Assembly: GCA_002104905.1 (NCBI GenBank) | Contig: MCFE01000081.1 | Span: 116,028 to 180,027 of the forward strand | Reading direction: 5' to 3' | Length of the DNA: 64,000 nt | Source: Basidiobolus meristosporus CBS 931.73 | Lineage: Eukaryota > Fungi > Basidiobolomycota | Shown here: positions 9,851-62,169 of the stretch, piece after piece | Position numbering within the stretch: the first letter of the stretch is position 1 | Layout of the letters: each line of letters starts with the position of its first letter | Program-made: the position numbers and the translations under genes | The notes under the pieces: model-generated | What the model was told of the DNA's origin: nothing | Databases searched by the model: none | The model's input: only the letters and a program-made list of their open reading frames with translations

Positions 9851-11991
9851 TTAGTTGTATTTGTTCTTTAGAGGAAGGGCAGGGCGGTCGTCTTCATCTT
9901 CTTGATCATTACTCAATGAAAGGGCATTGACTGCTTGATCAATGGGGAACTCTTCCAGAGTATCGAAGGTGGCCTTGGGGGAGCCTGGTACAGAGAGAGG
10001 TCTGGGGATCTTGTGATGTTCACCCTCCCCGAAGGCATCCTCTCCAGAGAAAGAGTCAGAGTAGCATCTTCTAAGTGCAAGTTGTCTAGCCTTCATGTAT
10101 TCAATACCAAGGCGCTTCCAGTCCAGCAAATCACTCAAACGTTCTGTACGGTTACGCTGGTTAATACGTTGACGGCGGGTCTTTTGACAGAAGTCGAACA
10201 TCTGGCTGCACAGCTGCTCAATGGACTCGTCAACAGCCTTCATTCGACGATCGACAATGTAGATACCATAATCGGAAGGATTTTCGATATTATCCTCCAT
10301 GTAACAACCGAAACCAGAGAGATTGGTTGTGATCGAAGGAACACCCATGACTGTACATTCGGCGGGAGTGTAACCCCATGGCTCGTAGTATGAAGCGAAA
10401 ACACCCAAGTGGCAACCACGAACAAAGTCTTCGTAATCAAGGCCGAGAACTGGGTTGTTTGAGTTGAGGAACTCGGGGTGGAAAATGACCTTGACTCTAT
10501 CCCCGTCAAAGTTGAACAGGTGATTGCGACGAAGTGCATTCAACACATCATCGTTGGCGTCATCAACCAGGTTGTGGGTTACAATGGCTGGCAAGTTGTT
10601 GCGCTTCAGTGCGAAGACACGACGCTTGAGAAGGACCTTCTCTTCTTCGGAAAGAAGATCACCACAATCCTTGGGTTCTTGTCCTCTAGCGGCGGCTTCG
10701 AATAGGCGCTCACCAATGTTCTTCTGGATTTGTTCAACGGTATCCTTCAGTTGCTTGGTGACTGCTTGTCCCTTCAAAGTATCTACAGTGTATGATTGGG
10801 TTTGGGCTGGCATAATGATAAAAGCTACAACGGTAGTCTTGGAGTTGGAGTTACGGAGGCGTTGGTTGAGTCTGGCCAAAGATTCGATGAACATGTCTAC
10901 ACCCTTGTTACGGAATTCATAACGACCCGCGGTGAAGAAATACACGGTGTTTTCGAGGTCAAAGTTGTAGTGTCCGTAGAAATGTCCTCTGACGAAGTCA
11001 TTGATCTTCTCTTTAGCAATTGCGTGGAGATTTTGGAATTCGTGCATAGCACTGAACTTGACCACGTTCAAACCATTTGGCAATACACCATCAGGCTTTC
11101 TCTTGAGAAGATGTTCTGCCTCATAGGCTGTGATGTGGGAAACGGTGGTAAACACATCGGCACAATGGGCGGAAGCTCTTTCCAGGCAGTAACGGTGATA
11201 GATTCCGCGTTTACCGGCCTCATGATCGACATCGAAATCGCGAAGACCGTTATAGAAGTCAGCATTACCAGCACACAAGTATCTTCCCAGAAGGGTGGCA
11301 TGGGTGGTGAAGATAGTAGCCACATCGATTTGGCGCTTTCTGCAGAGAACCAAACCAATACCGGCAAGCCACTCATGGAAATGAGCGATGACTGCAGTGT
11401 GACGTTGGCGGCGAACAAACTGTGTATTACGGTTGATTAGGAACCTACTATTGAGCTGCGATACATTACGGTACTAGCTTACCTCTTCCAAGAACCAAGC
11501 GACAAGATAGCCAAAAACGATAGCATCGTTGGTTTCGGTGTCGTTTGCAGGAGAGGGAATACCGGCAATCTTCCAGATATCAGCCTTCCATTCATCGAGC
11601 TTGTTAAAGGCGGACATAATATCAAAGAGTAGAACATGGGGGGCGCCTTCCACCAGCCAGCGACCATAAAGGTACTTCACACCGGCGTCTTCCATGCTTT
11701 TTAAGGTATCTTTCATTTCTTGGCTCGTGGGCTCCAGGCTTTCGACCTCCATAGGGGCGGTTTTCCAGTTGAGAGGACCAATAAGGGTGAAACGATCACC
11801 ATATTCCTTCACCGTGACCGGGGCCTTGGTCTTAATGACGGTGTAAATTCCACCAACTACATAACAAGAAGTAAGCAAGTGATATCTACCAGCAAGTGTT
11901 CTGACGTACTAGTTCACTACTCACCTTTGTTTGCAACCTCCCAAGCAATCTCAAACAAGAGGGGTCTGTGGACATCACGCTTTTGAGCCAT
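9851..11991 (-). CDS. GSY: Glycogen synthase (GT3), multi-exon
   Basis: [11 protein letters not shown] / [12 protein letters not shown]; [15 protein letters not shown]; [16 protein letters not shown]; [14 protein letters not shown]. Confidence 0.97.
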
Positions 11992-13182: not shown

Positions 13183-15649
13183 CTATACATAGCGATTCAT
13201 ACTCTGAGCTAGTGCAGTGATGTTATCATCAACGAAAGTGCCTTGAAGATTGCTTCTTTCCGTGCGTTCCACTAGCTCGACGAAATGATGGACATAGTCA
13301 TCCGCGATGAAGATCTGCTTCAATCCGAGTATCATGTCGTGCTTGATTTGGTCCATGGTCAGCTTGTACGACGAGGCCTTCATTTTTTCAAATGCTCCTT
13401 CGATATCTTCGACTTGGTGGGCGATGTGATGAACAAACCCGTGGCCCTTCTTCTGCAGAAGTTTCCTGAAAACACTTTCTTCAGTAAGACCGCTGGTGAT
13501 CACTAGGACACGGTGGTGATCGTTGGGCACTCCCATTACATGATTCAACATGTCATGCTCTCCCTCGGGGGCAGTGCCCACGTTGAGTCGGATGGTGTTT
13601 ATGTGCTTGTAGCCCAGGATGTTGACATGGAAGTCTTTCACCTTGTCGGCGTCATCAACAATCAGCGTGTAGTGATCAATTCCAGTATGTGCAAGAGCTG
13701 GCTCGGTGGAGAGTGGGGGCAGTGGCTTCATGGAGATATCATGGAAGTTCGTGACGTCAAATGCGTCCTCGAGGATTACAAAGCCATAGCCGCGATCCTC
13801 AGCAGGAATATTCAATCCACCCACAGTCCATAGTGGGTGTGATTTGACCAAATCAAAGGAAACAAAGTTTTGCTTTAGAGTATCTGTCACCAGATCGATA
13901 TCACTGGCACTGAACGCAAGATAATCAATCCCACAATCGGTGATGGCCGATGCGGGATCCTCGGAAATAATCAAGAACGGATCCTCTTTGGTCAAGAAGC
14001 GGATCACACATTGGCGGGTAAAACGGCGATCATTGTAGCTGGCGTTGCTGCCATCAATCATCTTGATCTCACAAGCCATATTCTCTTGGTAAAATTTCAG
14101 TGGGACTGTTAGATCTTGCGTAACGATGTGGTAATGGTGGATCTTTGATATAACAAGATCTTTGCGACGTCCCTCCAACTCCCGTTGTTGACGGATGGCC
14201 TGCGCGTATTTGCTGCAGCACTCATAAGAATTCAACGTTTGGTCAACCAGGGCGGCTCTTTGGATGAATTCGGTGATGTCGTTCCGGATGTCCTCCAGGA
14301 TCACTTTGGTAACGCTCTCCTCATCGGAATACTGTCTGGTGCAAGTCAACATGAACAAGCACGAAGTTCCAGAGTTGGTGACCCATTCTGGAAGCATCTG
14401 GACTCCAGCGTCGGTCAGACAACCCAGAAGAGCTGCCTGTTCCTGTGGAGAGGTGCGTTTAGATTGTCCTTCCTCCCACTTTCCAAAGACGTTGTTGGCC
14501 CCAGCCAAGATGAACCGGCTCCTGTCGTCAGAAGAGGCAAAGGTGGTTTCCACCAAGGCGCTAGCAATCTCAGCGGTCAGACAATATCTTCCTGCACATG
14601 GGGCCCAAACGTCGGCCTGCGTGGATTTGATAAATCTGAAGCATGTCAGCAGAGATGTTTGAATCAAGAGTGGCCCTTCACATACCTCAGCAAATAGTCC
14701 TGGTCATTTTCGTTTTCATCTCTTTTGGAATAGGCCGAGGATGCCAATTGTTCAGGGGTCAGACATGCCTCCACTGATTTGATATCAAGGCCGGCCTCAT
14801 CACGCCTCGCGTGACGAACCCTGAGCAGCTCAAGAACATCTATGTTATCGTCAACGTAAATCCCATCGATGCTCATGATTCCGACCACTCTGCCAATCCC
14901 AAGCTCCTTTAAATAATAGGCAAAGGTACTGCCAACAGTCCCAAACCCTTGAATGATCACTCTGGCCTTACCGATGAGCTCTGGATTGCGCACCTTCATA
15001 AGCTCAAAGAGACTCACAGCGGCACCGTAGCCAACAGATGCTTCGCTTAGGTTGAAGAATTCATTGACATCCATGGTCAGAGGCTTGTGCAAGATATTGA
15101 TCTCATTTTCCAACCCATGAGCCTTGTAGATGCTGTACAGCGCGGTAGAGATTCCAATCTCTTCTTTGAACAAAACATCAATAACGTGATGGTCAGTGTT
15201 AAGGTCAGCACCGGTTCCCCAGTAATTCAGTAGTACGCTCTTGTTATCTCGGAAGAATCTGCGCAGCACTTCTTGAGCACGAGGATCAGTGTGGTCAAAG
15301 CGGATACCCCCCTTGGCACCACGGACAGTCGAGATACGAGAGACGCACATCTTGTTACTCATGGTGTTGGCAATATCACAAACCTCCATGAGAGTTGCTG
15401 AAGAGGACATGAAAAGGCCTCCGCCAGCTGTGCGTGGTTGACTACCATCAATTGCGATCCAGCCGATAGCATTGGTTTCGCAGTCTTTCCATTCAAAGAT
15501 GGTGAAAGGCAGACCGTTATCATAGGTGATTGACTTCACTAAAAACAGAAGACACAGTCAACTACAGGCAAGGTGCACATCCACATGAAGCCTGACTTAC
15601 CAGTAACGAATTCTGAAGGTGAAAAGCTCTGAATGGAAGGCGTAGCCAT
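13183..15649 (-). CDS. Glu/Leu/Phe/Val-family amino-acid dehydrogenase fused to an HPPD-like (two VOC domain) Fe(II) dioxygenase; 3 exons, about 780 aa
   Basis: N-terminal half: AGGGL, MSNK, RGAKGGI (catalytic Lys), IQGFGTVG (NAD-binding), GANN, PEWVTNSG. C-terminal half: KIHHYHIV, GIDHYTLIV, GFVHHIAHQVEDI, LKQIF, FVELVER. Two GT-AG introns join the ORFs in frame. Confidence 0.85.
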
Positions 15650-16673: not shown

Positions 16674-18172
16674 ATGTCAGCAAATCCAGATCAAGGTGAA
16701 AAGGGTATCGAGATAAGATCTGAGCCGCCAAATGGGCCCCCAGATGGGCCCCCAGATGGTGGTTATGGGTATGGTTAACCCCGCAACCGACAAATGCGCC
16801 TATTTTCTAATCTCCATTTCTTTTCGATGCAAGGTGGTTTGTGGTGGCTGGCTCATTTCTTTGCCAATGGGTGATATTTGGTTATAATTTCACCTGGGGG
16901 ATCTACGAAGATTACTACCATCGGGAGGTTTTCAAAGAGAGCGTCTCCATTTCCGTCTTGGCGCTGGTTGGCACAGTGGGAACCGCGTTGATTGTAGTAC
17001 TGGGGCCTATAAATGGGCCTCTCATAGATCGCTTTGGCTACAGGAAGCTGGCAGGACTGGGCGCCATTCTGCTTCCATTGGGAATATTCTTGGCTTCGTT
17101 TGCAACTGAGGTACTGACGCGTCTAATATTGATAGCCCAAGCGATCCACTAACCCTTGGTATGCATATAGCTTTGGCACCTCTTCCTAACTCAGGGACTA
17201 CTTTATGGGATTGGTGCGTCTTTAGTATTCTTCCCATCAGTAGGAATTATAGCCGAGTGGTTCAGCGTTAAAAGAGGACTAGCATCGGGTATTGCCGTCT
17301 CTGGCACTGGAGTGGGGGGTCTGGTCCTAGGACCTCTTACTCGTAAATTGATAGATGTGGTCAATGTTGCCTGGACTTTGAGAATCATTGCAATCCATGC
17401 TTTTGTATTCCTAGTCGTTGCAGCATTCCTACTCAAAGGACGTATCGAGAGACCCAAGCGCTCATTTAGCCTCGACTTCTCATTACTTCATGATAGGAGA
17501 TTTGTTGCCCTACTTGTCACCTCTTTCTTTGAATATTTCGCATACGTTATTCCATTTTTCCTGACTCCAGGTATGTGACCGTATTACTGAAATGCTTGCG
17601 CTTATTGCTAATCTCCCGGATAGAGTATTGCGTATACATCGGGCTTGGTTCTAGCACCGGTGGTCTTTTTGTAGGACTTATGAGCGGTGCAAATGCAGTT
17701 GGCCGTATTGTATTCGGATTTGTTGCCGATAAATTTGGGAATACGGTCACCATTACTAGCTGCACTTCTCTTGCAGGCCTATCGATTTTATTATTATGGT
17801 CATTCTCCCACGGCTATGCACTTATGTGTATTTTCGTGCTGGCTTACGGGTTTTTCGGCGGTGGCTTCGTAAGCCTATTGCCAGTGGTAACCGCACAAAT
17901 CACGGGTAGGTATCTTTCTATGACCGTGTCTGGAATAGGCGCTAACAAATCTGCCAGGTGTCCAAAAGCTCGGAAATGCATTGGGCCTGGTATTTGCTAC
18001 TACAATAGTTAGTAATCTGGTGGGAACACCAATTGCGACCGCCTTGAAGGGTACCGCCGGTAGTGGTAATATGGAGTATATTCCCCCAATACTATTCTCT
18101 GGGTTTGTCACCCTTGCTGCTGCTTGCAGTCTGCTGACTCTTCACCTGATGAAGAAACCCCAGAGTCCCTGA
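16674..18172 (+). CDS. MFS monocarboxylate transporter (MCT/Mch family), multi-exon
   Basis: PPDGGYG N-terminal motif, multiple TM segments, DRFGYR and ADKFGN loop motifs, EWFSVKRGLASGIAVSGTGVGG. Confidence 0.9.
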
Positions 18173-19872: not shown

Positions 19873-22800
19873 TGTTGTAAAAATTCGTATTTTCCACCTA
19901 AATATTCACCTAACTTAGTCACTTAGATCACCACCTTCAAATCCTAGAGAATACTGACCAAATTCCTTGTCGGGATTTACTTAGAATATTTACCCAGAAC
20001 ATGAAAATTCTCAAAGTTGTCCAAACAGCCCCAAACTTTGCACACATGTTCTTGGGACCTTCCTTAACCTATTCTACGTGTTTGTAATGCCAAGACCATG
20101 TAAAAGTATAAATACTACTTTTACATTCAATAAATCATTAAGTGAAAACCACATAATCTACTTGTTCTCCAAATCACTTCCAATATCTCCAAGACTCTTA
20201 CAACAGGTTATGAGCCCCAAGCTGTCACTCTCTGCAATGTCTACTACTGCTATTACTGGAATTTTTCCCTCTGCTGAAAAGTTGGATGGCTCTAACTACC
20301 AAGTGTGGAAGGTGAAGATGAAGATGCTGCTACAAGAAAGAGGCCTTTGGGATATTGTCATGGGAGAAGAATGTCCTCCTAAAAACATGGGAGAGGAAGC
20401 CTTAAAGTACCAGAAGAAAGAACAAAGTGCCTTTAACTGCATTTGCCTTAATGTCAAGGACAAATTGCTAATTCAATGCTCAAGAGCAAAAACGGCAAAG
20501 AATGCCTGGAAGGCATTAGAAGACACCTACCAGTCATGTTCAGCTGCCAAGAAAATGTATCTGAGAAGAAAATTCTTTACTACAAAGATGCTGCCAAGAG
20601 AAGAAATGAAAAATCTAATTAACAGAATTACCCTGCTGGTAGATGAGATGGAATCTGTGGGCGTACCAACTACTGATGAGGATGTGATAGTTACCATCCT
20701 GAATAGCCTGACAGACGAGTTTCAGGGCCTTGTATCAGCCCTAGAGTCCAGAACTGAAGATTTGACCTTAAATTACGTATATGGAAGGCTCCTGGATGAA
20801 GAATTAAGAAAATCAAGCGCCAATAAGAAGGAAGAAGAAAATGCTTTAATAAGCAATGATAACCAACAAAGGAGGTACCCAAGACCCTACAAAGGCAACA
20901 GCAACCTATTTTGCAACTACTGCAAAAGGAAAGGACACACATCAGACCGGTGTTTCAAAAAGAGAGATTATCAGCAAAAGAAGCCTGAATATGGAAATGC
21001 TGCAACAACTGAAGATAGACTATTCATATCTGCACTAAATATGACCACAAACAAGGATTCTCAGACGTGGTATATTGACTCCAGAGCATCTCAACACTTT
21101 ACACAACAAAAAGAACTTTTTACCCAATATCAAGAAATTCCAATTAAGAAGGTTTTCATGGGTGACAATAGAACACTTGATGCAGTGGGAGAAGGAACTA
21201 TCCAAGTAAACCTTAGAAGCAGTGAAGGAAGCCATACACTGACCTTTAAAGAAGTACTCTATGTACCAGAAATAGCCAAGAACCTACTCTCTGTAAGCAA
21301 GGCCACAGCAGAAGGACTCAGTTTCAGTTTTGACAATTCTGGATGCAGGATCACTGATCAAAATGGTGCTCATATTGCTTTGGGCATCAGAGATCAGAAC
21401 CTATACAAGTTGACTTATATTCCATCATATCTGGAAGCCAATATAAGTAACTTAAATGAAGAAACACCAATGCTTTGGCACAGGAGATTTGGACACATCA
21501 ATTTTGATTATTTGCGTAAAATGATCAAAGATCAGCTAATTTCTGGAGTGAAAATTGATCCCCCAGCTATTTTGGAGCACTGTGAAGCCTGCATATATGG
21601 GAAACAAGCCAGACAACCGTTCAAGAGCTCTGGGTTAATCAAAACTAAGAAAAAATTAGATCTAATTCACTCAGATCTGTGTGGACCTATGCAAAATTTA
21701 TCCTTAGGCGGGATGAAGTATTTAATCACTTTTATTGATGATTATACAAGATACACATGGGTCTACTTCATGGAGAGAAAGGAAGAAGCTCTGTCTAAGC
21801 TCAGGGAGTTTAAAGCCATGGTGGAGAGAGAAACTGGTGAAAAAATCAAGAAAATACGCTCTGACAATGATGGAGAATATACCTCAAAACTCTTCATCCA
21901 CTTCTGCAAAATTCATGGGATAAAGCAAGAGACTACTATACCATACTCCCCACAGCAAAATGGAGTAGCAGAACAAGCTAACAGATCAATAATTGGTATG
22001 GCAAGATCTATGATCCATGATCAAAAATTATCCTATGATTTTTGGGCGGAATCAGTTGCCACTGCTGTATATCTTAAAAATAGGAGTTATAACAGAATAC
22101 TTCGTGATTCTACTCCATTTGAAGCATGGTATGGATACAGACCAAGTGCAGAACATCTAAGAATATTTGGGTGTACAGCATATGCCAAAAAACTGGCCGG
22201 AAATCAGTCAAAATTTGAGCCAAAAAGTGTAAAATGCATATTTTTGGGCTACTGCAATGAGAGTAAGGCATACAGACTCTACAATACTGAAGCAAAGAAG
22301 CTGATCAAGTCCAGGGATGTGTTGTTTGATGAAAATTCAAAATTTTCACAAAAAATGACATCAGATGATGACGAAAATTTGATCTCAAGTCCACCAATTG
22401 TCAGGATTGAATCAGAGCAAAACAATGAAAATTTTTTCACTCCAGAGGACTCTACAACCGTGGTTCAGCCAGAATCAGTGCCCAGGAATATCCCAGAAGT
22501 GATTATTCCAGTATCAAATGCCCGGAGATCCAATCGGACAAGAAATAGCCCAAATTACTATATCAATGAGGGTACAAACTTAGCCTATGCCTATTCAGTC
22601 CATGTTGATGAACCCCAGACTGTAAAAGAGGCCCTAAATAGCCCTCAGACAAAGTTTTGGAGATCTGCAATGACTGAGGAATATCAGGCACTGATGGAAA
22701 ATCAAACTTGGGACTTAGTCAAATTACCAATCAACCAAAAATCAATTGGATGCAGATGGGTCTTCAGGACAAAATACAAGGCTGATGGTACAATTGAAAG

Positions 22801-24541
22801 ATACAAAGCAAGACTTGTAGCCAAAGGATACTCTCAAACAAAAGGACTTGACTATACTGAGACCTTTGCACCGGTAGCCAAATTTAATTCCATCAGATTA
22901 ATATTGGCTATTGCAGCCAAATATAAGTTTTTTATTCATCAAATGGATGTAAAAACTGCATTTTTGAATGGAGAACTTGATGAGGACGTGTATATGGACC
23001 AGCCTGATGGGTTTGTTGACCAAGATAACCCCCATTTGGTCTGCAAGCTTAAAAAGTCACTCTATGGTCTCAAACAATCACCGAGAGCCTGGAATTGCAA
23101 GATAGATTCTTATTTGGAATCTTTGAGTTTCAAAAGGAGTAATGCTGACTATAGTATATACTATAAGCCAGATAGAGCAAATCCAGTCCTATTAGCTCTA
23201 TATGTGGATGATCTTATTATAGCCGCCAATAACCTAGAAACATTGGAAGAGACTAAATCCAGCCTATCTAAGGAGTTCAAGATGTCCGATCTAGGAGAAC
23301 TTAGTTACTACTTAGGGATTAAGTTCTCCATAGACAGAAGTACCCAGACTATTACCCTAAGCCAATCCAAGTATATTCAAGATATACTAAAGAAGTACAA
23401 AATGGAAGACTGTAAACCGGCAGCTACCCCAATGGAGACAAACCTTAACTTGGTCAAAACTCAACCAAATCAAGAGAGCTTGGTGCCATCTGAAAGCCCT
23501 GACTTTCCTTATCAATCTATGGTCGGCAGTCTGATGTATATTGTGCTTGGAACACGTCCAGATATCTCATACTCAGTGGGAGTTGTCAGCCAACATAATC
23601 AGAATTATGGATCTGATCATATTGCAGCAGTTAAGCGGATTTTTAGATACCTAAAAGGAACTGCTGATATCTGCTTAAGATACACTTATAAGGATTCAGA
23701 ACAGGATCTTGTGGGATACTCTGATGCTGATTGGGGACAAAATTTAGAAGACAGAAGATCCACCACAGGATACACCTTTCTTTACTGTAAAGGAGCCATT
23801 TCATGGAATTCAAGAAAGCAACCAACCGTAGCACTTTCTACTACAGAGGCAGAGTATATGGCAGCCTGTGAAGCTACAAAAGAAGCAATGTGGTTAAGAA
23901 AGCTCTTTACAGATTTAGGCCTATGTCAAAAAACGCCTACTACTTTATTTCAAGATAATCAAGGATGTATACAATTAGGTAGAAATCCAACTTTTCATGC
24001 TAGAACCAAGCACATAGATATTAGACATCATTTCATACGTGAAGCTATAGAGAATAACTTAGTTAGCTTAGTTTACTGTCCTACAGATGAAATGATTGCA
24101 GACATATTTACCAAACCATTAGCTAGAGACAAGTTTGAATATCTTAGGTCAAAATTAGGACTAGTCAGTATGAACATTTAGCTGAGTGGGAGTGTTGTAA
24201 AAATTCGTATTTCCACCTAAATATTCACCTAACTTAGTCACTTAGATCACCACCTTCAAATCCTAGAGAATACTGACCAAATTCCTTGTTGGGATTTACT
24301 TAGAATATTTTCACCAAAATACCAGGTACCCAGAACATGAAAATTCTCAAAGTTGTCCAAACAGCCCCAAACTTTGCACACATGCTCTTGGGACCTTCCT
24401 TAACCTATTCTACGTGTTCGCAATGCCAAGACCATGTAAAAGTATAAATACTACTTTTACATTCAATAAATCATTAAGTGAAAACCACATAATCTACTTG
24501 TTCTCCAAATCACTTCCAATATCTCCAAGACTCTTACAACA
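19873..24541 (+). mobile_element. Full-length Ty1/copia LTR retrotransposon
   Basis: 5' LTR 19873-20205, 3' LTR 24193-24541 (TG...CA); TSD ATTGC on both sides; PBS GGTTATGAGCCC at 20206; purine tract before the 3' LTR. Confidence 0.97.
20210..24181 (+). CDS. Copia gag-pol polyprotein (gag, CCHC knuckle, protease, integrase, RT, RNase H)
   Basis: Uninterrupted ORF: KLDGSNYQVWK, CNYCKRKGHTSDRC, WYIDSRASQH, LIHSDLCGP, RLVAKGYSQ, LYVDDL, YSDADW; first plausible ATG at 20210 or 20237. Confidence 0.95.
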   Translation: MSPKLSLSAMSTTAITGIFPSAEKLDGSNYQVWKVKMKMLLQERGLWDIVMGEECPPKNMGEEALKYQKKEQSAFNCICLNVKDKLLIQCSRAKTAKNAWKALEDTYQSCSAAKKMYLRRKFFTTKMLPREEMKNLINRITLLVDEMESVGVPTTDEDVIVTILNSLTDEFQGLVSALESRTEDLTLNYVYGRLLDEELRKSSANKKEEENALISNDNQQRRYPRPYKGNSNLFCNYCKRKGHTSDRCFKKRDYQQKKPEYGNAATTEDRLFISALNMTTNKDSQTWYIDSRASQHFTQQKELFTQYQEIPIKKVFMGDNRTLDAVGEGTIQVNLRSSEGSHTLTFKEVLYVPEIAKNLLSVSKATAEGLSFSFDNSGCRITDQNGAHIALGIRDQNLYKLTYIPSYLEANISNLNEETPMLWHRRFGHINFDYLRKMIKDQLISGVKIDPPAILEHCEACIYGKQARQPFKSSGLIKTKKKLDLIHSDLCGPMQNLSLGGMKYLITFIDDYTRYTWVYFMERKEEALSKLREFKAMVERETGEKIKKIRSDNDGEYTSKLFIHFCKIHGIKQETTIPYSPQQNGVAEQANRSIIGMARSMIHDQKLSYDFWAESVATAVYLKNRSYNRILRDSTPFEAWYGYRPSAEHLRIFGCTAYAKKLAGNQSKFEPKSVKCIFLGYCNESKAYRLYNTEAKKLIKSRDVLFDENSKFSQKMTSDDDENLISSPPIVRIESEQNNENFFTPEDSTTVVQPESVPRNIPEVIIPVSNARRSNRTRNSPNYYINEGTNLAYAYSVHVDEPQTVKEALNSPQTKFWRSAMTEEYQALMENQTWDLVKLPINQKSIGCRWVFRTKYKADGTIERYKARLVAKGYSQTKGLDYTETFAPVAKFNSIRLILAIAAKYKFFIHQMDVKTAFLNGELDEDVYMDQPDGFVDQDNPHLVCKLKKSLYGLKQSPRAWNCKIDSYLESLSFKRSNADYSIYYKPDRANPVLLALYVDDLIIAANNLETLEETKSSLSKEFKMSDLGELSYYLGIKFSIDRSTQTITLSQSKYIQDILKKYKMEDCKPAATPMETNLNLVKTQPNQESLVPSESPDFPYQSMVGSLMYIVLGTRPDISYSVGVVSQHNQNYGSDHIAAVKRIFRYLKGTADICLRYTYKDSEQDLVGYSDADWGQNLEDRRSTTGYTFLYCKGAISWNSRKQPTVALSTTEAEYMAACEATKEAMWLRKLFTDLGLCQKTPTTLFQDNQGCIQLGRNPTFHARTKHIDIRHHFIREAIENNLVSLVYCPTDEMIADIFTKPLARDKFEYLRSKLGLVSMNI

Positions 24542-26394: not shown

Positions 26395-27261
26395 ATGAAA
26401 GTACTAGCTTGCTTAGCCTCACTGTGTATCTTAAGCTCCGTGTCAGGCCACATGGAGATTCAGTCACCGGCCCCTCGTAAATCTACCTTCAGCAAGTACT
26501 ATCAGTCAATTAGGGATATTGACTATGATATGAATGGTCCGCTAGGCGTATTCCCTTGTAAGGGATATAAACCAGGGCATGTTGAATACACCTACAACGC
26601 TGGTGATACTGTGCAAGTCCAGTTTGCTCCCGGAAATACCCATGATGGTGGGCATTGTCAATTTGCCCTCTCTTATGATAATGATCAGACATTTGTTGTG
26701 TTAAAGACAGTCGTTCGCGACTGCTTCAAGAATGGTCTCACTTTTGACGTACCAATCCCTGCCAATGCTCCTCCTAGTAAACGGGCCACCCTAGCATGGA
26801 CATGGGTTAATGCCGAAGGTAATAGGGAATACTACATGAACTGCGTTGATATTACAATTAATGGTGGAGTCCCTGGTGGAAAGGTCACTGGTCCGAAGCT
26901 CATGGTAGCAAACCTTCCTGGCTATCCCACCATTCCTGAATTTGCTCTTGGTAAAGGTGATGGCCACCAGTTGCTTGACAATCGCCCTATTATTACAGTT
27001 GGTGCTACAGATAGCGGATCAACCCCAGAGCCTACCACCACTTCTACAACTAAGCCTTCTGCAACAACTTCAGCCACACCAACCGCCACCAATAATCCGG
27101 GCAGCGGCTTATGTACTGGTGTAGCAGTATGGACGGCCAATTCAGCATATAGTGCTGATCAAAAAACCACGTATAATGGTCATCTTTGGCAAGCCAAATG
27201 GTGGACCCAGAATGAAACTCCAGGCAAGCAAGGAGTCTGGACCGACCTGGGAGTCTGTTAA
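26395..27261 (+). CDS. Secreted AA11-like lytic polysaccharide monooxygenase with C-terminal CBM5/12 chitin-binding domain
   Basis: Signal peptide followed by N-terminal His (VSG|HMEI), NTHDGGHCQF, LAWTWVNAEGNREYYMNC, T/P linker, YNGHLWQAKWWTQNETPG; intronless. Confidence 0.85.
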   Translation: MKVLACLASLCILSSVSGHMEIQSPAPRKSTFSKYYQSIRDIDYDMNGPLGVFPCKGYKPGHVEYTYNAGDTVQVQFAPGNTHDGGHCQFALSYDNDQTFVVLKTVVRDCFKNGLTFDVPIPANAPPSKRATLAWTWVNAEGNREYYMNCVDITINGGVPGGKVTGPKLMVANLPGYPTIPEFALGKGDGHQLLDNRPIITVGATDSGSTPEPTTTSTTKPSATTSATPTATNNPGSGLCTGVAVWTANSAYSADQKTTYNGHLWQAKWWTQNETPGKQGVWTDLGVC

Positions 27262-29487: not shown

Positions 29488-32400
29488 ATGCGTGTCAGTT
29501 GGTTCCAGAACTACAGAGCCGCGCTGATTGCTGCCTCTCTGTCTGCGTTGCACGCAGAGGCTTCCTACAAACTGGTATTTGAAGATAACTTCAATACATT
29601 CGACTTGAGCCGATGGAAGGTGAATATTGTGCTGTTTACGCGTATTTAAAGTATCAAGCTAACGTTTTTCTGAAGCACGATATCACCTTGAGCGGTGGAA
29701 GGTAGTTCTACACTTGTCATTGCTCTATTGCATGTTGATTCACCAGGTGTTACCTAGCAATTGGGAGTTTGAGTACTATTATAACAACCGCTCTAACTCG
29801 TACGTGAAGGATGGAGTCCTCTACATCAAGCCCACTTTTACTGCCGACAGAATTGGTGAAGCTGCAGTCATGGATGGTGGGGAAATCGATCTTTGGTAAG
29901 TTCACATCGAAATGTTAGCCGCCTTTTTTCTGAATACTGACCTCATCTCACAGGGGCACGGTGCCTGCCGATGTTTGTACGGGTAAATACTTATCAGATA
30001 TACCTTAAAGTGGCTAGGCTCTAACTGTAACCCAAAAAGGAAACGAGGACTATGGGTGTCTGCGCGCGAGTAACGGGCAGAATATTCTAAACCCAATTCA
30101 GTCTGCGCTTGTTCGTTCATACGAGTCTATCAATGTACAATACGGTAAAGTCGAGATTCGAGCCAGATTGCCGCGTGGTGATTGGATATGGTACTCAAAT
30201 GTCATAGCCGAATTTCTGGAAGTGTTTTACTAATGCTTTTGATTTCAGGCCGGTAAAGTGAAATGTTGTTGAACACTGCGAATGTAGCATTTATTAACTC
30301 CAGAATAGGCCATCTGGATGTTACCCAAGTCCGAGCAATATGGTCCTTGGCCCGCTTCTGGTGAAATCGATATTGTTGAATCCCGTGGAAACCTGGGTAA
30401 TTACCCAAATGGGCTAAACACAATGTCATCGACGTTGCACTGGGGTATCTGTTTTACTATACGCATAACTGCATACCGCATAGAGCTAATCTTTAAAAAT
30501 ACGAATTGTAAGGCCCTTCTTATCAATACGATAGATATCAGAAGACCACTGCATCCTATAGGTTACCGGGAAATGCTGATTTTAGTCAGGACTTCCATAT
30601 TTTTACTCTCGAGTGGAATAGTAACACCATCAAAACAAGTGTGGATAACACAACCGTCTTGGAAGTCGCGTTTGACGAGCCCTTATGGGAAAAAGGCGAT
30701 TTTCCAGAAGGATTAAACAATCCTTGGGCCTCAGGGGGTAAAAATGCTCCATTTGACAAAGAGTTTTATCTTATATTTAATGTTGCTGTTGGTGGAGTAA
30801 ATGGATACTTCCCAGACCACCCTGACAAGCCATGGTCAAATACTTCCCCAACAGCACCTGAGGAGTTTTGGGAAAGAAGGAATGAGTGGATGGGAACTTG
30901 GCCGGACAACGAATACAGAGCGATGGCTATAGACTACGTCAAAGTTTGGTCAGATACAGCTGATCAAACCGACAAGAGCACGGCAACAAGTCAGCATAAA
31001 ACCAAGTCAACAGAATCTGCGCAAAGCAAAGGCAACAAGGCCAAGAGTGCACACTTAACAACAACAAAGCCCCCTTCCAGTGAGCACAACACCATAAAGA
31101 GCTCTCACCCGGCTAAGTCAACCGAGTCTCACTCAAGCAAGCATACTACTGTGAAGAGCGAACACTCAGTCAACCCAACAGAGTCTCACTCGAGCGAGCA
31201 CACTACTAAGAAGAGCGAACACCCGGTTAAGCCAACTGAGTCTCACTCCAGTGAGCACACTACTGCGAAGAGCGAACACTCAGCCAAGCCAACTAAGTCT
31301 CACTCAGTCGAGCACACCACTGTCAAAAGTGAACACTCGGTCAAGCCAACAGAGTCTCACTCGAGCGAGCACACTACTAAGAAGAGCGAACACTCGGTCA
31401 AGCCAACCAAGTCACATTCCAGCGAGCACACCACCATGAAGAGCGAACACCCGGTGAAGCCAATTAAATCTCACTCAAGCAAGCACACTACCGAGAAGAG
31501 CGAACACTCGGTCAAGCCAACTGAGTCTCACTCAAGCAAGCACACCACCATGAAGAGCGAGCACTCGGTCAAGCCAACTGAGTCTCACTCCACCAAGCAC
31601 ACTACTGAGAAGAGTGAACACTCAGTCAAGCCAGCTGAGTCTCACTTGAGCGTGCACACTACTGAGAAGAGTGAAAACTCGGTCAAGCCAACTGAGTCTC
31701 ATTCCAGTGAACACACTACTGCGAAGAGCGAACACTCAGTCAAGTCAACTGAGTCTCACTACAGCAAGCACACTACCGAGAAGAGTGACAACTCAGTCAA
31801 GCCAACTGAGTCTCATTCCACTGAGCACACTACTGCGAAGAGTGAACACTCGGTCAAGCCAACTGAGTCTCATCCCAGCAAGCACACTTCTGCGAAGAGT
31901 GGCCACTCGGTCAAGCCCACTGAGTCTCACTCCAGCGAGCACACAAGCATCAAGAGCGAACACTCGGTGAAGCCAACTGAATCTCACTCAAGCAAGCACA
32001 CTACCGAGAAGAGTAACCACTCAGTCAAGCCCACTGAGTCTCATTCCAGTGAACAAACTAGTGAGAAGAGCGAACGCTCGGTCAAGACAACTGAGTCTCA
32101 CGCAACCGAACACACTACCCAGAAGAGTGAACACTCGGTCAAGCCAACCAAGTCTCATTCCAGTGAGCACTCGGTCAAGACAACTGAGTCTCACTCGAGC
32201 GAGCACACCACCATGAAGAGCGAACACTCGGCCAAGCCAACTGAGTCTCACTCAAGCGAGCACACCACCATGAAGAGCGAACACTCGGCCAAGCGAACTG
32301 AGGCTCACTCAAGCGAGCACGCCACCATGAATAGTGAACACTCGATCAAGCCAACTGAGTCTCACTCCAGCGAGCACACCGCCATGAATAGTGAACACTC

Positions 32401-35400
32401 GATCAAGCCAACTGAGTCTCACTCAAGCGAGCACACCACCATGAACAGTGAACACTCGGCCAAGCCAACTGAGTCTCACTCAAGCGAGCACACCACCATG
32501 AAGAGTGAACACTCGGCCAAGCCAACTGAGGCTCACTCAAGCGAGCATGCTACCGAGAAGAGTGAACACTCGGCCAAGCCAACTGAGTCTCACTCGAGCG
32601 AGCACACCACCGTGAAGAGCGAACACTCGGTCAAGCCAACTGAGTCTCACTCAAGCGAGCACACCACCATGAAGAGTGAACACTCGGTCAAGCCAACTGA
32701 GTCTCACTCGAGCGAGCACACCACCTTGAAGAGTGTACACTCGGTCAAGCCAACTGAGTCTCACTCGAGCGAGCACACCACCATGAAGAGCGAACACTCG
32801 GTCAAGCCAACTGAGTCTCACTCGAGCGAGCACACCACCATGAATAGTGAACACTCGATCAAGCCAACTGAGTCTCACTCAAGCGAGCACGCCACCATGA
32901 AGAGCGAACACTCGGCCAAGCCAACTGAGGCTCACTCAAGCGAGCATACTACCGAGAAGAGTGAACACTCAGCCAAGCCAACTGAGTCTCACTCGAGCGA
33001 GCGCACCACCGTGAAGAGCGAACACTCGGTCAAGCCAACTGAGTCTCACTCAAGCGAGCACACCACCATGAAGAGTGAACACTCGGCCAAGCCAACTGAG
33101 TCTCACTCAAGCGAGCACGCCACCATGAAGAGCGAACACTCGGTCAAGCCAACTGAGGCTCACTCCAGCGAGCACACCACCATGAATAGTGAACACTCGA
33201 TCAAGCCAACTGAGTCTCACTCAAGCGAGCACACCACCATGAAGAGTGAACACTCGGTCAAGCCAACTGAGTCTCACTCGAGCGAGCACACCACCATGAA
33301 GAGCGAACACTCGGCCAAGCCAACTGAGTCTCACTCGAGCGAGCACACCACCATGAATAGTGAACACTCGATCAAGCCAACTGAGTCTCACTCCAGCGAG
33401 CACACCGCCATGAATGGTGAACACTCGATCAAGCCAACTGAGTCTCACTCAAGCGAGCACACCACCATGAACAGTGGAACACTCGGCCACGCCAACTGAG
33501 TCTCACTCAAGCGAGCACACCACCATGAAGAGTGAACACTCGGCCAAGCCAACTGAGGCTCACTCAAGCGAGCACACCACCATGAAGAGTGAACACTCGG
33601 CCAAGCCAACTGAGTCTCACTCGAGCGAGCACACCACCGTGAAGAGCGAACACTCGGTCAAGCCAACTGAGTCTCACTCAAGCGAGCACACCACCATGAA
33701 GAGTGAACACTCGGTCAAGCCAACTGAGGCTCACTCAAGCGAGCACGCCACCATGAACAGTGAACACTCGGCCAAGCCAACTGAGTCTCACTCAAGCGAG
33801 CATGCTACCGAGAAGAGTGAACACTCGGCCAAGCCAACTGAGTCTCACTCAAGCGAGCACACCACCATGAAGAGTGAACACTCGGTCAAGCCAACTGAGT
33901 CTTACTCCAGCGAGCACACCACCGTGAAGAGCGAACACTCGGTCAAGCCAACTGAGTCTCACTCAAGCGAGCACACCACCATGAAGAGTGAACACTCGGT
34001 CAAGCCAACTGAGGCTCACTCAAGCGAGCACACCAATATGAAGAGTGAACACTCGGCCAAGCCAACTGAGTCTCACTCAAGCGAGCACACCACCATGAAG
34101 AGTGAACACTCGGCCAAGCCAACTGAGTCTCACTCGAGCGAGCACACCACCATGAAGAGTGAACACTCGGTCAAGCCAACTGAGGCTCACTCAAGCGAGC
34201 ACACCACCATGAAGAGTGAACACTCGGCCAAGCCAACTGAGTCTCACTCGAGCGAGCACACCACCATGAACAGTGAACACTCGGCCAAGCCAACTGAGTC
34301 TCACTCGAGCGAGCACACCACCATGAAGAGTGTACACTCGGTCAAGCCAACTGAGTCTCACTCAAGCGAGCACACCACCATGAAGAGTGAACACTCGGCC
34401 AAGCCAACTGAGTCTCACTCGAGCGAGCACACCACCGTGAAGAGCGAACACTCGGCCAAGCCAACTGAGTCTCACTCAAGCGAGCACACCGCCATGAAGA
34501 GTGAACACTCGGTCAAGCCAACTGAGGCTCACTCAAGCGAGCACGCCACCATGAACAGTGAACACTCGGCCAAGCCAACTGAGTCTCACTCAAGCGAGCA
34601 TGCTACCGAGAAGAGTGAACACTCGGCCAAGCCAACTGAGTCTCACTCAAGCGAGCACACCACCATGAAGAGTGAACACTCGGTCAAGCCAACTGAGTCT
34701 CTACTCCAGCGAGCACACCACCGTGAAGAGCGAACACTCGGTCCAAGCCAACTGAGTCTCACTCAAGCGAGCACACCACCATGAAGAGTGAACACTCGGT
34801 CAAGCCAACTGAGGCTCACTCAAGCGAGCACACCACCATATGAAGAGTGAACACTCGGCCAAGCCAACTGAGTCTCACTCGAGCGAGCACACCACCATGA
34901 AGAGTGAACACTCGGTCAAGCCAACTGAGGCTCACTCAAGCGAGCACACCACCATGAAGAGTGAACACTCGGCCAAGCCAACTGAGTCTCACTCGAGCGA
35001 GCACACCACCATGAACAGTGAACACTCGGCCAAGCCAACTGAGTCTCACTCGAGCGAGCACACCACCATGAAGAGTGTACACTCGGTCAAGCCAACTGAG
35101 TCTCACTCAAGCGAGCACACCACCATGAAGAGTGAACACTCGGCCAAGCCAACTGAGTCTCACTCGAGCGAGCACACTACCGTGAAGAGCGAACACTCGG
35201 CCAAGCCAACTGAGTCTCACTCAAGCGAGCACACCGCCATGAAGAGTGAACACTCGGTCAAGCCAACTGAGGCTCACTCGAGCGAGCACACCACCGTGAA
35301 GAGTGTACACTCGGTCAAGCCAACTGAGTCTCACTCGAGCGAGCATACTACTGAGAAGAGTGAACACTCGGCCAAGCCAACTGAGGCTCACTCAAGCGAG

Positions 35401-55887: not shown

Positions 55888-56014
55888 ATCCAGAGTTTCA
55901 GCTTCAAATTTCAATTTTTGAGATTTTTGGGTGATTTTTGATGGGCAGGATCAAAATTAGGGTTAGGGTTGCGCGCTGTGACTGCTTTTTACGATTGCAA
56001 GGTCAGAACCTAGG

Positions 56015-56318
56015 AAAAAATAAAAATAGTTAGTAAAGGTGATTTAATGGATGGATGGATGGATTCGGAGTCAGATTCAATCAAAATATCAAATTGTTGA
56101 CTAATTTAAAAGAGCAGAAAAAATAAAAATAGTTAGTAAAGGTGATTCAATGGGTGGATGGATGGATTTGGAGTCAGATTCAATCAAAAAATCAAATTGT
56201 TGACTAATTTAAAAGAGGAAAAAATAAAAATAGTTATTAAAGGTGATTTAATGGATGGATGGATGGATTTGGAGTCAGATTCAATAAAAAAATCAAATTG
56301 TTGACTAATTTAAAAGAG
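56015..56318. repeat. Three tandem 101-103 bp monomers containing (GGAT)n
   Basis: Units start at 56015, 56118 and 56219: AAAAAATAAAAATAGTTAGTAAAGGTGATTTAATGGATGG...GACTAATTTAAAAGAG. Confidence 0.95.
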
Positions 56319-56329
56319 AGGGTTAGGGG

Positions 56330-57307: not shown

Positions 57308-57318
57308 GGGTAGGGGGG

Positions 57319-58817: not shown

Positions 58818-58829
58818 GGGTTAGGGGGG

Positions 58830-60084: not shown

Positions 60085-60096
60085 TTAGGGGGGGGG

Positions 60097-61694: not shown

Positions 61695-61722
61695 TTAGGG
61701 TTAGGGTTAAGGGTTAGGGGGG

Positions 61723-62168
61723 AGACAGTCACCAACAGGTGAAATCTTTATTTCAGTTGAAACAAAGAAGCCAGCGCTACTGTTGTAGCTTTGATACAAG
61801 AGTGTGTAGCTGAGGGGAATTTGTAGGTAAGTTAATAAGAAGTGATGATAGTTCTTCAGTGCTCAACACACTGTTCAGTGGGAAGGGGGGTAGCAAGAGA
61901 GGTAAGAATGACTTGTGAACAACATTAATGAGGGGAATGTGATAAGGATTGATATTCATCATAAAGGGAGTGTGCTGCTGCAGATATTGCTGCCAAAGGT
62001 CTGTCAAGTACTTCAGGTAGGCCAGCTTGGGTTTTTCTGACTGCAGAATAAATTCAGCAAACTTCTTGACTTCAGGATCTCCAAGTATAGTTCTCCAGCA
62101 GGAGTCAGGTGTAGTGTGGTGTGTTCTCTTCCAGGCCTTAATCAGTGGGTTGTTGCAGTTGTGAAGTC

Positions 62169-62169
<1 letters not shown>
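61723..62169 (-). mobile_element. 5'-truncated LINE copy F (about 0.45 kb)
   Basis: Shared 3' end; followed by about five telomeric repeats, one of them TTTAGGG. Confidence 0.95.

What the first reader, a model, noticed from the sequence alone, without database searches (positions are those of the whole stretch)
13183..15649. Amino-acid dehydrogenase fused to an HPPD-like dioxygenase: a possible two-step pathway in one polypeptide
Seen: after splicing two short introns, an ELFV-family dehydrogenase with both key Lys motifs (MSNK, GAKGG) and GxGxxG continues in frame into tandem VOC domains. These retain the HPPD-type His-His-Glu Fe(II) triad (IDH, HHIA, ELVER) and the C-terminal QIF...F..N..AL pattern. 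Established: these dehydrogenases make 2-oxo acids from amino acids, and HPPD/hydroxymandelate synthase consume aryl-2-oxo acids. Inference: channelled conversion such as Tyr/Phe to (hydroxy)phenylpyruvate to homogentisate or (hydroxy)mandelate. I do not recall this fusion being described. The low intron number and bacterial-style motifs hint at horizontal origin.
Basis: partly seen in the sequence, partly recalled or inferred. Interest (0 to 1): 0.75.

Follow-up and report, generated by a model that had tools for sequence, protein, structure and literature searches.

The report
Amino-acid dehydrogenase fused to HPPD-like domains
This is a real three-exon gene of the fungus Basidiobolus meristosporus that joins an intact-looking, non-glutamate amino-acid dehydrogenase to an HPPD-like metal-binding domain pair; about twenty other fungi share the architecture, I found no paper on it, and it probably carries out two consecutive steps on one amino acid.

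Summary
On the minus strand, three exons (15649-15601, 15538-14686, 14635-13186; stop 13185-13183) encode 784 aa. The public record K493DRAFT_312792 of Basidiobolus meristosporus matches them exactly.

The N-terminal ~460 aa are a divergent but complete Glu/Leu/Phe/Val (ELFV) dehydrogenase. It keeps both Lys, the Asp and the GxGxxG motif. It lacks the Lys that binds the glutamate side chain.

The C-terminal ~325 aa fold as two VOC domains. Their best structural matches are hydroxymandelate synthase and HPPD (Z 22-24; Foldseek 3e-18). Extradiol dioxygenases are only 2-3 Z units behind. By sequence, the catalytic C-terminal domain is closest to methylmalonyl-CoA epimerase. It fails the HPPD family cut-off.

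The same fusion occurs in about 20 database proteins from other fungi, including Fusarium, Claviceps, Colletotrichum and Trametopsis. I found no paper on it.

New support comes from 22 bacterial loci. There the orthologous VOC domain sits beside a VAO-type flavoprotein in 21. It also sits beside a flavin amine oxidase (10) or an aminotransferase (8). So three unrelated amino-group-removing enzymes partner one VOC clade.

The two-step "amino acid to 2-oxo acid to VOC" idea is plausible (about 0.45). Substrate, product and oxygenase chemistry are untested. A horizontal origin is not shown.

The parts
15601..15649 (-). Exon 1 (ATG at 15649; 16 codons plus the first base of a split GTG codon)
   Evidence: identical to the N-terminus of public protein P0001
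15539..15600 (-). Intron 1, 62 nt, GTAAGT...TAG
14686..15538 (-). Exon 2: ELFV dehydrogenase substrate/dimerisation domain and the first part of the NAD(P) domain. Holds GGGLF, MSNK, GAKGG, DLNT and QGFGTVG.
   Evidence: Pfam PF02812 and PF00208. Invariant residues in alignment A3. Aligned to glutamate dehydrogenase motifs. Codon positions.
14636..14685 (-). Intron 2, 50 nt, GTATGT...CTGAC...CAG; contains the in-frame TGA at 14666-14664
   Evidence: gapless junction against intronless orthologues
13183..14635 (-). Exon 3 (483 whole codons plus the stop at 13185-13183): the rest of the NAD(P) domain and both VOC domains
14185..14635 (-). C-terminal part of the ELFV dehydrogenase fold (APCAG, AGANN, LPEWVTNSGT motifs)
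   Evidence: Family-conserved columns. Profile aligns to phenylalanine and glutamate dehydrogenase C-terminal parts. Full GDH-like fold in the orthologue model.
13735..14157 (-). N-terminal VOC domain. It is poorly conserved (15-20% identity among fungi) and the second metal-binding His is replaced (DYLAF). Probably structural, like the N-domain of HPPD.
   Evidence: NCBIfam NF050075 at 1.2e-10; identities; AlphaFold2 model
13186..13686 (-). C-terminal VOC domain with family-invariant His (13674-13672), His-His (13431-13426), Gln-x-Phe (13317-13309), Glu (13278-13276) and tail Asn (13224-13222). Probable catalytic metal site.
   Evidence: Invariant columns; Pfam PF00903; 42-49% identity to bacterial VOC proteins; fold searches; residue alignments to HPPD and HMS

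Best explanation
One three-exon gene encodes a 784-aa bifunctional enzyme.

Shown: the architecture, the splice structure, the conservation of the fusion in other fungi, and the retention of the catalytic residue sets.

Inferred: the N-terminal ELFV-type domain uses NAD(P)+ to oxidatively deaminate an amino acid that is not glutamate, giving its 2-oxo acid. The Lys that binds the glutamate side chain is replaced by Gly. The C-terminal VOC domain is packed against a degenerate N-terminal VOC domain, as in HPPD and hydroxymandelate synthase. It is inferred to bind that 2-oxo acid on a His/His/Glu metal centre, probably Fe(II), and to convert it. The most likely conversion is an O2-dependent oxidative decarboxylation and hydroxylation of the HPPD/hydroxymandelate-synthase type.

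The substrate is unknown. Aromatic (Tyr/Phe) and branched-chain (Leu to 2-oxoisocaproate to 3-hydroxyisovalerate) routes are both conceivable. Channelling between the two sites is not shown.
For: Gene model:
- It is identical to public protein P0001.
- The splice junction aligns gaplessly with intronless orthologues.

Fusion:
- About 20 proteins of 626-835 aa have the same architecture, from Trametopsis, Claviceps, Colletotrichum, Fusarium and unnamed assemblies.

ELFV half:
- Pfam scores exceed the cut-offs.
- Invariant in fusions and stand-alone relatives: K62, GAKGG, D-x-N-T, QGFGxVG and NSGT. These align to the corresponding glutamate dehydrogenase motifs.
- The GDH KGGxR motif reads GGGLF here.
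- The orthologue model matches hexameric GDHs over about 430 columns (Foldseek 5e-18, TM 0.69).

VOC half:
- AlphaFold2 model with pLDDT 84 and pTM 0.84.
- The Foldseek top 50 are all HPPD or HMS; the best is 1cjx at 2.7e-18.
- VIA-align gives HMS 2r5v Z 23.8 and HPPD 8xtv Z 22.2.
- Invariant in 44 sequences: D-H, HH, Q-x-F and E; the tail N is nearly invariant (at least 90%) there and invariant in the 12-sequence alignment.
- GVHHIA aligns to HPPD GVQHIAL. The tail aligns to S. coelicolor HMS at Q-I-F, E-x-I-x-R and F...N...LA.

Context (22 bacterial loci holding the orthologous VOC):
- 21 have an adjacent FAD_binding_4/cytokinin-dehydrogenase-like oxidase.
- 10 have a flavin amine oxidase.
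- 8 have a class I/II aminotransferase. One further metagenome locus has an aminotransferase-GNAT fusion.
- With the fungal ELFV fusion, this makes three non-homologous amino-group-removing partners.
Against: - No HPPD/HMS family profile is met: TIGR01263 scores 23-27 bits against a cut-off of 277, and its best stretch is to the N-domain part of the profile.
- The C-terminal domain is closest by sequence to methylmalonyl-CoA epimerase (1.7e-9) and matches it closely in structure (Z 14.6, rmsd 2.2).
- Its His-to-Glu spacing is 50 residues, as in the epimerase. In P. fluorescens HPPD it is about 82 (my own knowledge).
- The tail alone gives no significant hit. In one search the tail alignment scores -1 bit.
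- Extradiol dioxygenases reach Z 20-21.
- The universal bacterial partner is the VAO-type flavoprotein, not the amino-group remover. Four loci show no amino-group remover.
- That flavoprotein is absent next to the fungal genes.
- A stand-alone ELFV relative sits beside a MaoC dehydratase, not a VOC gene.
- There are no expression or activity data.
Confidence: 0.45

Rival explanations
1. The fusion is real, but the VOC domain is not an oxygenase. It would act as a metal-dependent isomerase, epimerase, tautomerase or lyase of the methylmalonyl-CoA epimerase or glyoxalase type. Its substrate could be the 2-oxo acid (or its enol) made by the dehydrogenase, or an unrelated compound.
For: The best sequence matches of the C-terminal VOC domain are methylmalonyl-CoA epimerase and small glyoxalase-like proteins. 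As a single domain it superposes on the epimerase at Z 14.6, rmsd 2.2. The His-to-Glu spacing matches the epimerase. The bacterial relatives are single VOC domains, one of them named as an epimerase by its source.
Against: All epimerase family scores are far below cut-off: TIGR03081 gives 38-41 bits against 115. The family has the Q-x-F, E-x-I-x-R and F...N...LA tail that aligns to hydroxymandelate synthase. The two-domain model ranks HMS and HPPD first. Partnership with oxidases and amino-group removers is not epimerase-like.
Confidence: 0.25
2. The order of steps is reversed, or the pathway is cyclic. The VOC domain would make a new 2-oxo acid, directly or through a further oxidase. The ELFV domain would then reductively aminate it with NAD(P)H to a non-proteinogenic amino acid. 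This is analogous to the last step of hydroxyphenylglycine biosynthesis.
For: ELFV dehydrogenases are reversible (established knowledge). The bacterial module of VOC + flavoprotein oxidase + aminotransferase has the same three-part logic as HmaS + Hmo + HpgT (my own knowledge). Extradiol dioxygenase folds score Z 20-21.
Against: The fungal loci lack the flavoprotein oxidase needed to regenerate an oxo acid. No direct evidence bears on the direction.
Confidence: 0.15
3. The dehydrogenase is an ordinary glutamate dehydrogenase, as some database names say. The VOC domains would be a regulatory or stress-related add-on with no metabolic link.
For: Source names such as 'Glutamate dehydrogenase 1' for the Colletotrichum orthologue. 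The best structural and sequence matches of the ELFV half are GDHs.
Against: The GDH Lys of KGGxR aligns to Gly and the Arg to Phe in the whole subfamily. All GDH equivalog profiles score far below cut-off: 35 bits against 750. Bacterial partners of the same VOC clade point to a metabolic link.
Confidence: 0.07
4. Gene-model artefact: two genes, or a truncated dehydrogenase ending at the TGA at 14664, with the downstream part not translated as one chain.
For: There is an in-frame stop at 14666-14664 if intron 2 is retained. No RNA-seq was available here.
Against: Intron 2 has canonical signals. Its removal restores a gapless match to intronless orthologues across the junction. The junction lies inside the dehydrogenase fold, so a stop there would truncate the NAD(P) domain. 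The fusion is encoded without introns in Fusarium, Colletotrichum, Claviceps and an unnamed fungus.
Confidence: 0.03

Closest known systems
4-hydroxyphenylpyruvate dioxygenase and hydroxymandelate synthase (VOC superfamily, 2-His-1-carboxylate Fe(II), 2-oxo-acid substrates)
   Same: Two tandem VOC domains, with the metal ligands only in the C-terminal one. These are the best structural matches (Foldseek 2.7e-18, Z 22-24). The second metal His aligns to HPPD GVQHIAL. The tail shares Q-I-F, E-x-I-x-R and F...N...LA with S. coelicolor HMS.
   Different: Only 13-18% identity. TIGR01263 is far below cut-off. The C-terminal domain is about 30 residues shorter between the second His and the Glu. The tail similarity is not significant on its own. 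The protein is fused to a dehydrogenase. Bacterial relatives are single VOC domains followed by an SRPBCC-like domain.
Glu/Leu/Phe/Val (ELFV) amino-acid dehydrogenases
   Same: Both Pfam domains are above cut-off. The catalytic Lys (GAKGG), the carboxylate-binding Lys, the Asp of the D-x-N-T motif, GxGxxG and the NSG motif are conserved. The fold is GDH-sized and GDH-like.
   Different: Very divergent: 15-20% identity to solved GDHs. The Lys that recognises the glutamate side chain is Gly. It belongs to a small subfamily together with stand-alone proteins of pandoraviruses and unnamed metagenome contigs at 34-40% identity. It is fused to VOC domains.
Methylmalonyl-CoA epimerase and small glyoxalase-like VOC proteins
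   Same: Best sequence matches of the C-terminal VOC domain. Same domain size and His/His/Glu spacing. Z 14.6, rmsd 2.2.
   Different: Scores are far below the family cut-off. The family here has an extra C-terminal helix with a conserved Asn. It has a different context: a dehydrogenase fusion in fungi and oxidase or aminotransferase neighbours in bacteria.
QuiC1-type dehydroshikimate dehydratase (TIM barrel fused to an HPPD-like domain, PDB 5hmq)
   Same: Precedent for an HPPD-like two-domain VOC module fused C-terminally to another enzyme. Structural match Z 20.1 over 281 residues.
   Different: The N-terminal partner is a xylose-isomerase-like TIM barrel, not an ELFV dehydrogenase. Identity is only 12%.

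Membership tests
ELFV amino-acid dehydrogenase superfamily (PF02812 + PF00208) | Both Pfam domains above the gathering score | tested here: met
   PF00208 scores 33.2 bits (cut-off 23.4); PF02812 scores 26.2 bits (cut-off 25.3).
ELFV amino-acid dehydrogenase superfamily (PF02812 + PF00208) | Catalytic Lys in G-G-x-K-G-G, carboxylate-binding Lys, catalytic Asp, GxGxxG dinucleotide motif | tested here: met
   K62, GAKGG (K75), D111-L-N-T and QGFGTVG are invariant in alignment A3. They align to GDH MTWK, GGAKGG, PAPDVNT and QGFGNVG.
ELFV amino-acid dehydrogenase superfamily (PF02812 + PF00208) | Two-domain GDH-like fold | tested here: met
   Tested on the orthologue P0007 (43% identical in exon 2). 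The model matches GDHs at Foldseek 5e-18, TM 0.69 over about 430 columns. The window's own full chain was not folded.
Glutamate dehydrogenase proper | Lys of K-G-G-x-R that binds the glutamate side-chain carboxylate; equivalog profile above cut-off | tested here: not met
   That Lys aligns to Gly and the Arg to Phe (GGGLF). NF040817 scores 34.6 bits against a cut-off of 750.
HPPD / hydroxymandelate synthase family (TIGR01263) | Family profile above cut-off | tested here: not met
   23.3 and 26.8 bits against a cut-off of 277. The best stretch maps to profile positions 2-135, the N-domain.
HPPD / hydroxymandelate synthase family (TIGR01263) | Two VOC barrels, with His/His/Glu in the C-terminal one | tested here: met
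   Model with pLDDT 84. HMS and HPPD are the top structural matches. His, HH and Glu are invariant on the first, fifth and eighth strands of the C-terminal domain. Geometry could not be inspected because no coordinates were available.
HPPD / hydroxymandelate synthase family (TIGR01263) | C-terminal gating helix with Q-I-F, E-x-I-x-R and G-N-F-x-x-L motifs | tested here: inconclusive
   A helix is predicted at the C-terminus. The pattern aligns to HMS 3zgj with about 17 of 40 residues identical, but the domain score is -1 bit. The tail alone finds nothing.
HPPD / hydroxymandelate synthase family (TIGR01263) | Fe(II)- and O2-dependent oxidative decarboxylation of a 2-oxo acid | not testable with these tools
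   Needs an enzyme assay.
Methylmalonyl-CoA epimerase (TIGR03081) | Family profile above cut-off | tested here: not met
   38.3-40.9 bits against a cut-off of 114.95.
Type I extradiol dioxygenases (e.g. TIGR03213) | Family profile above cut-off | tested here: not met
   15.5-16.7 bits against a cut-off of 366. Fold similarity is Z 20-21, so the fold alone does not exclude it.

The most novel reading that the evidence does not exclude
The fungal ELFV-VOC fusions and the bacterial module together mark an unrecognised, widely scattered pathway. The bacterial module is VOC-SRPBCC plus a cytokinin-dehydrogenase-like flavoprotein plus an amine oxidase or an aminotransferase. At its centre would be a new minimal clade of 2-oxo-acid-consuming VOC oxygenases: a single epimerase-sized domain with an HPPD/HMS-type tail. 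The pathway would shorten or rearrange an amino acid through its oxo acid, with hydroxyphenylglycine-like logic but non-homologous parts. In fungi the first two steps would have been welded into one polypeptide.
Probability: 0.3. Interest if true: 0.7.

Novelty: new variant of a known kind. Interest (0 to 1): 0.55.

Why it matters
If the two halves act in sequence, this would be a self-contained catalyst. It would turn an amino acid into a decarboxylated, hydroxylated acid using only NAD(P)+ and O2. Possible products are of the homogentisate, mandelate or hydroxyisovalerate type. That is of interest for biocatalysis and for assigning orphan steps in fungal metabolism.

It would also give a function to a conserved bacterial gene module found in Myxococcota, Bacteroidota, Planctomycetota, Acidobacteriota, Pseudomonadota and Legionella.

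It would further show that HPPD-type chemistry can run on a much smaller VOC domain than in known HPPDs.

If the VOC part is not an oxygenase, the finding is a modest one: an uncharacterised domain fusion of two well-known superfamilies.

Tried and rejected
1. Searching the 51-aa tail alone against PDB sequences and NCBIfam gave no hits. The HPPD-type tail therefore rests on a weak printed alignment plus the fold.
2. Seven literature searches found nothing on this fusion or on the bacterial module. They used locus tags, domain names, fusion terms and cluster terms.
3. I looked for a stand-alone ELFV gene next to a stand-alone VOC gene and did not find one. P0057 sits by a MaoC dehydratase. P0046 and P0048 sit on contigs that look like giant-virus DNA.
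4. I tested for a conserved fungal gene cluster. An O-methyltransferase is the divergent neighbour in Fusarium verticillioides and Colletotrichum spinosum (66% identical orthologues). An unrelated one lies 3 kb away in one unnamed fungus. None is present in Claviceps africana, Trametopsis, another unnamed fungus or this window. I reject this as a general feature.
5. The bacterial flavoprotein partner is not present in the window.
6. The protein-language-model atlas gave only generic VOC clusters.
7. Horizontal origin: the gene's GC (0.484) is close to that of its flanks (0.45-0.46). The VOC tree puts Basidiobolus on the branch between the Dikarya fusions and the bacteria, on a long branch. This is undecided, not supported.
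8. The large representative-protein search was not run. It was flagged as costly and the claim does not rest on an absence of relatives.
9. I did not build or search a joined spliced sequence of my own. Searches were done exon by exon, by reference. The joined chain entered only as the database record P0001 returned (Pfam scan, a row in alignment A5). The full-length fold was done on the intronless orthologue P0007.
Full report
**1. What is in the sequence**

The feature lies on the minus strand. Two long ORFs, 15539-14664 and 14667-13183, are separated by a TGA at 14666-14664.

That stop lies inside a 50-nt intron (14685-14636) with textbook fungal signals: GTATGT, a CTGAC branch site and CAG. 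A 62-nt intron (15600-15539, GTAAGT...TAG) follows a 49-nt first exon that starts at the ATG at 15649.

The three exons are 15649-15601, 15538-14686 and 14635-13186 (stop 13185-13183). Together they give 784 codons.

The word search returned a 100% identical, 784-aa public protein. It is 'hypothetical protein K493DRAFT_312792' of Basidiobolus meristosporus CBS 931.73. So the window is from that early-diverging fungus. One search shows that this record equals exon 1 + V + exon 2 + R + exon 3, where V and R are the two split codons.

The exon 2/3 junction lies in the middle of the dehydrogenase fold. It aligns without a gap to orthologues that are encoded without introns. A retained intron would truncate the NAD(P) domain.

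I built and searched no joined sequence of my own. All searches used the exons by reference. The joined chain appears only as the database record that one search returned.

**2. The dehydrogenase half**

Pfam finds ELFV_dehydrog_N and ELFV_dehydrog above their curated cut-offs, though weakly. All glutamate dehydrogenase equivalog profiles score far below cut-off.

A profile of the family aligns to solved glutamate dehydrogenases at 1e-13 and to phenylalanine dehydrogenase at 2e-7. The motifs line up as follows:

| This family | Glutamate dehydrogenase |
|---|---|
| MSNK / smsaK | MTWK |
| GAKGG | GGAKGG |
| GGDLNT | PAPDVNT |
| QGFGTVG | QGFGNVG |
| LPEWVTNSGT | LPDxxANxGG |

These residues are invariant in the sampled fungal fusions and in the stand-alone relatives.

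The GDH motif K-G-G-x-R reads G-G-G-L-F here. Its Lys binds the glutamate side chain (established knowledge of the family). So a glutamate-specific enzyme is unlikely.

An AlphaFold2 model of the intronless orthologue P0007 has pLDDT 75 and pTM 0.60. It matches hexameric GDHs over about 430 columns (Foldseek 5e-18, TM 0.69).

The nearest stand-alone relatives are 34-40% identical. They are 416-495-aa proteins of pandoraviruses and of unnamed metagenome contigs. Two of those contigs look like giant-virus DNA. One is bacterial and sits beside a MaoC dehydratase.

**3. The VOC half**

Exon 3 residues ~160-300 and ~317-483 are two complete VOC domains.

The N-terminal VOC domain:
- It is only 15-20% identical among the fungal proteins.
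- It has lost the second metal-binding His (DYLAF in place of HHIA).

The C-terminal VOC domain:
- It is 32-52% identical among fungi.
- It is 42-49% identical to bacterial proteins of about 330 aa.
- Invariant in 44 sequences: D-H (IDH), H-H (HHIA), Q-x-F and E (ELVER); the tail Asn is nearly invariant (at least 90%) there and invariant in the 12-sequence alignment.

The AlphaFold2 model of the two domains has pLDDT 84 and pTM 0.84. It places these residues on the first, fifth, seventh and eighth strands of the C-terminal domain and on a terminal helix.

Structural matches:

| Search | Match | Score |
|---|---|---|
| Foldseek vs PDB | Top 50 all HPPD or hydroxymandelate synthase; best 1cjx | 2.7e-18, TM 0.69 |
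| VIA-align, Foldseek-independent | HMS 2r5v | Z 23.8 (286 residues, rmsd 3.3) |
| VIA-align | HPPD 8xtv | Z 22.2 |
| VIA-align | Catechol 2,3-dioxygenase and other extradiol enzymes | Z 20-21 |
| VIA-align | Methylmalonyl-CoA epimerase, C-terminal domain alone | Z 14.6, rmsd 2.2 |

By sequence, the C-terminal domain is closest to the epimerase profile (1.7e-9). The HPPD profile follows at 3e-6, matched to its N-domain part. Both are far below the family cut-offs.

The tail alone finds nothing. A printed alignment of the bacterial relative P0016 to S. coelicolor hydroxymandelate synthase does line up Q-I-F, E-x-I-x-R and F...N...LA. About 17 of 40 residues are identical, but the score is -1 bit. 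GVHHIA aligns to the HPPD motif GVQHIAL, which holds the second metal His.

My reading is this. The module has the architecture of HPPD/HMS and a similar tail, built on an epimerase-sized catalytic domain. It is not a member of the HPPD family as that family is defined.

**4. Relatives and context**

About 20 database proteins of 626-835 aa share the whole architecture. They come from Trametopsis cervina, several Claviceps, Colletotrichum and Fusarium species (including FVEG_06594), and unnamed assemblies. Sources name them only 'VOC domain-containing protein', 'Glu/Leu/Phe/Val dehydrogenase family' or 'Glutamate dehydrogenase 1'. Seven full-text searches found no paper on them.

The fungal neighbourhoods show no conserved cluster:
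- An O-methyltransferase is the divergent neighbour in Fusarium verticillioides and Colletotrichum spinosum only.
- In this window the neighbours are glycogen synthase and an MFS transporter.

The bacterial relatives are not two-VOC proteins. They are one VOC domain followed by an SRPBCC-like domain of about 150 aa.

A scan of species-representative genomes gave 22 true loci. They come from Myxococcota, Bacteroidota/Flavobacteriales, Planctomycetia, Acidobacteria, Pseudomonadota and Legionella qingyii. The neighbours of the VOC gene are:

| Adjacent gene | Loci (of 22) |
|---|---|
| FAD_binding_4 / cytokinin-dehydrogenase-like flavoprotein | 21 |
| Flavin amine oxidase, often fused to that flavoprotein | 10 |
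| Class I/II aminotransferase immediately downstream | 8 |
| No amino-group remover detected | 4 |

One further metagenome locus has an aminotransferase-GNAT fusion upstream. Of the four loci with no amino-group remover, two are planctomycete loci among housekeeping genes, one is cut off, and one is Legionella.

So the same VOC clade is partnered with a flavin amine oxidase, a PLP aminotransferase or, in fungi, a fused NAD(P) dehydrogenase. These are three unrelated ways of turning an amine into a carbonyl.

Two caveats apply. The universal bacterial partner is the flavoprotein, and that flavoprotein is missing next to the fungal genes.

**5. Mechanism**

Most likely (about 0.45): oxidative deamination of a non-glutamate amino acid by the ELFV part. 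This would be followed by metal-dependent conversion of the 2-oxo acid by the C-terminal VOC domain, probably by HPPD/HMS-type oxidative decarboxylation.

Rivals:
- A non-oxidative epimerase- or glyoxalase-like reaction (0.25).
- The reverse or cyclic order, with reductive amination last, as in hydroxyphenylglycine biosynthesis (0.15).
- A plain glutamate dehydrogenase with an unrelated add-on (0.07).
- A gene-model artefact (0.03).

Substrate, product, metal, oxygen use and channelling are all inferred, not shown.

**6. Origin**

The gene's GC (0.484) is close to that of its flanks (0.45-0.46), and it carries two spliceosomal introns.

In the tree of the C-terminal VOC domain, the Dikarya fusions and the bacteria each form a well-supported group (99/91 and 100/100). 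Basidiobolus sits on a long branch between them. This fits vertical descent with bacteria as the outgroup. It also fits an old transfer.

**7. Verdict**

This is an uncharacterised domain fusion of two known enzyme superfamilies, conserved in a small family. It is a new variant of a known kind. A testable two-step hypothesis now has comparative-genomic support. Interest is 0.55.

Noticed in passing
L018-L039 (bacterial loci); e.g. L009:3473-7727 and L032:5202-9193: A conserved, apparently uncharacterised bacterial module. It consists of a VOC-SRPBCC protein (about 330 aa) next to a FAD_binding_4/cytokinin-dehydrogenase-like flavoprotein in 21 of 22 loci. A flavin amine oxidase, often fused into a 952-aa protein and preceded by a small TerB-like protein, is present in 10 loci. 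A class I/II aminotransferase is present in 8.
   Followed up: partly
L038:5578-7953 (Legionella qingyii): Here the VOC domain (178 aa) and the SRPBCC-like domain (144 aa) are separate adjacent ORFs after the flavoprotein gene. No amine oxidase or aminotransferase is nearby.
   Followed up: partly
P0047, P0053-P0056, P0058 (Pandoravirus proteins); L003, L004, L017: Pandoravirus 'glutamate dehydrogenases' and proteins on contigs that look like giant-virus DNA belong to the same divergent ELFV subfamily as the fungal fusions (34-40% identity). They share the loss of the glutamate-binding Lys, so they are probably not glutamate dehydrogenases.
   Followed up: partly
window 9851-11878 (-): Glycogen synthase gene (PF05693, 2e-259 and 1e-50), split by at least one intron. 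It is the downstream neighbour of the fusion gene.
   Followed up: partly
window 16841-18012 (+): MFS transporter fragments (PF07690) in several exons. The gene is transcribed divergently from the fusion gene, about 1.2 kb from its start codon. It could import the substrate or export the product, but the pairing is not seen in other fungi.
   Followed up: partly
window 20078-24181 (+): A copia-type LTR retrotransposon with an uninterrupted 1367-aa gag-pol ORF (gag, protease-like barrel, integrase, RVT_2). It looks intact.
   Followed up: no
window 26395-27261 (+): ORF with a CBM5/12 chitin-binding module and a weak AA9-like (lytic polysaccharide monooxygenase) match.
   Followed up: no
window 30641-33499 (+), composition anomaly 32000-36000: A 952-aa ORF with no Pfam hit. 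It begins with what I read by eye, untested, as the end of a glucanase-like domain. It continues as a long tandem repeat of a Ser/His/Thr/Lys/Glu-rich unit of about 19 aa (...SEHTTxKSEHSVKPTESHS...). This explains the GC of 0.545 and AT skew of 0.4 in that region.
   Followed up: partly
window 52000-64000: Strong positive GC skew (0.22-0.36). Earlier notes of this scan describe telomere-associated retroelements here. I did not examine this.
   Followed up: no
L011:8259-9239 and L013:8216-9274: Orthologous O-methyltransferases (PF00891, 66% identical) are the divergent neighbours of the fusion gene in Fusarium verticillioides and Colletotrichum spinosum. This is a possible two-gene unit in Sordariomycetes. 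It would fit a phenolic product.
   Followed up: partly
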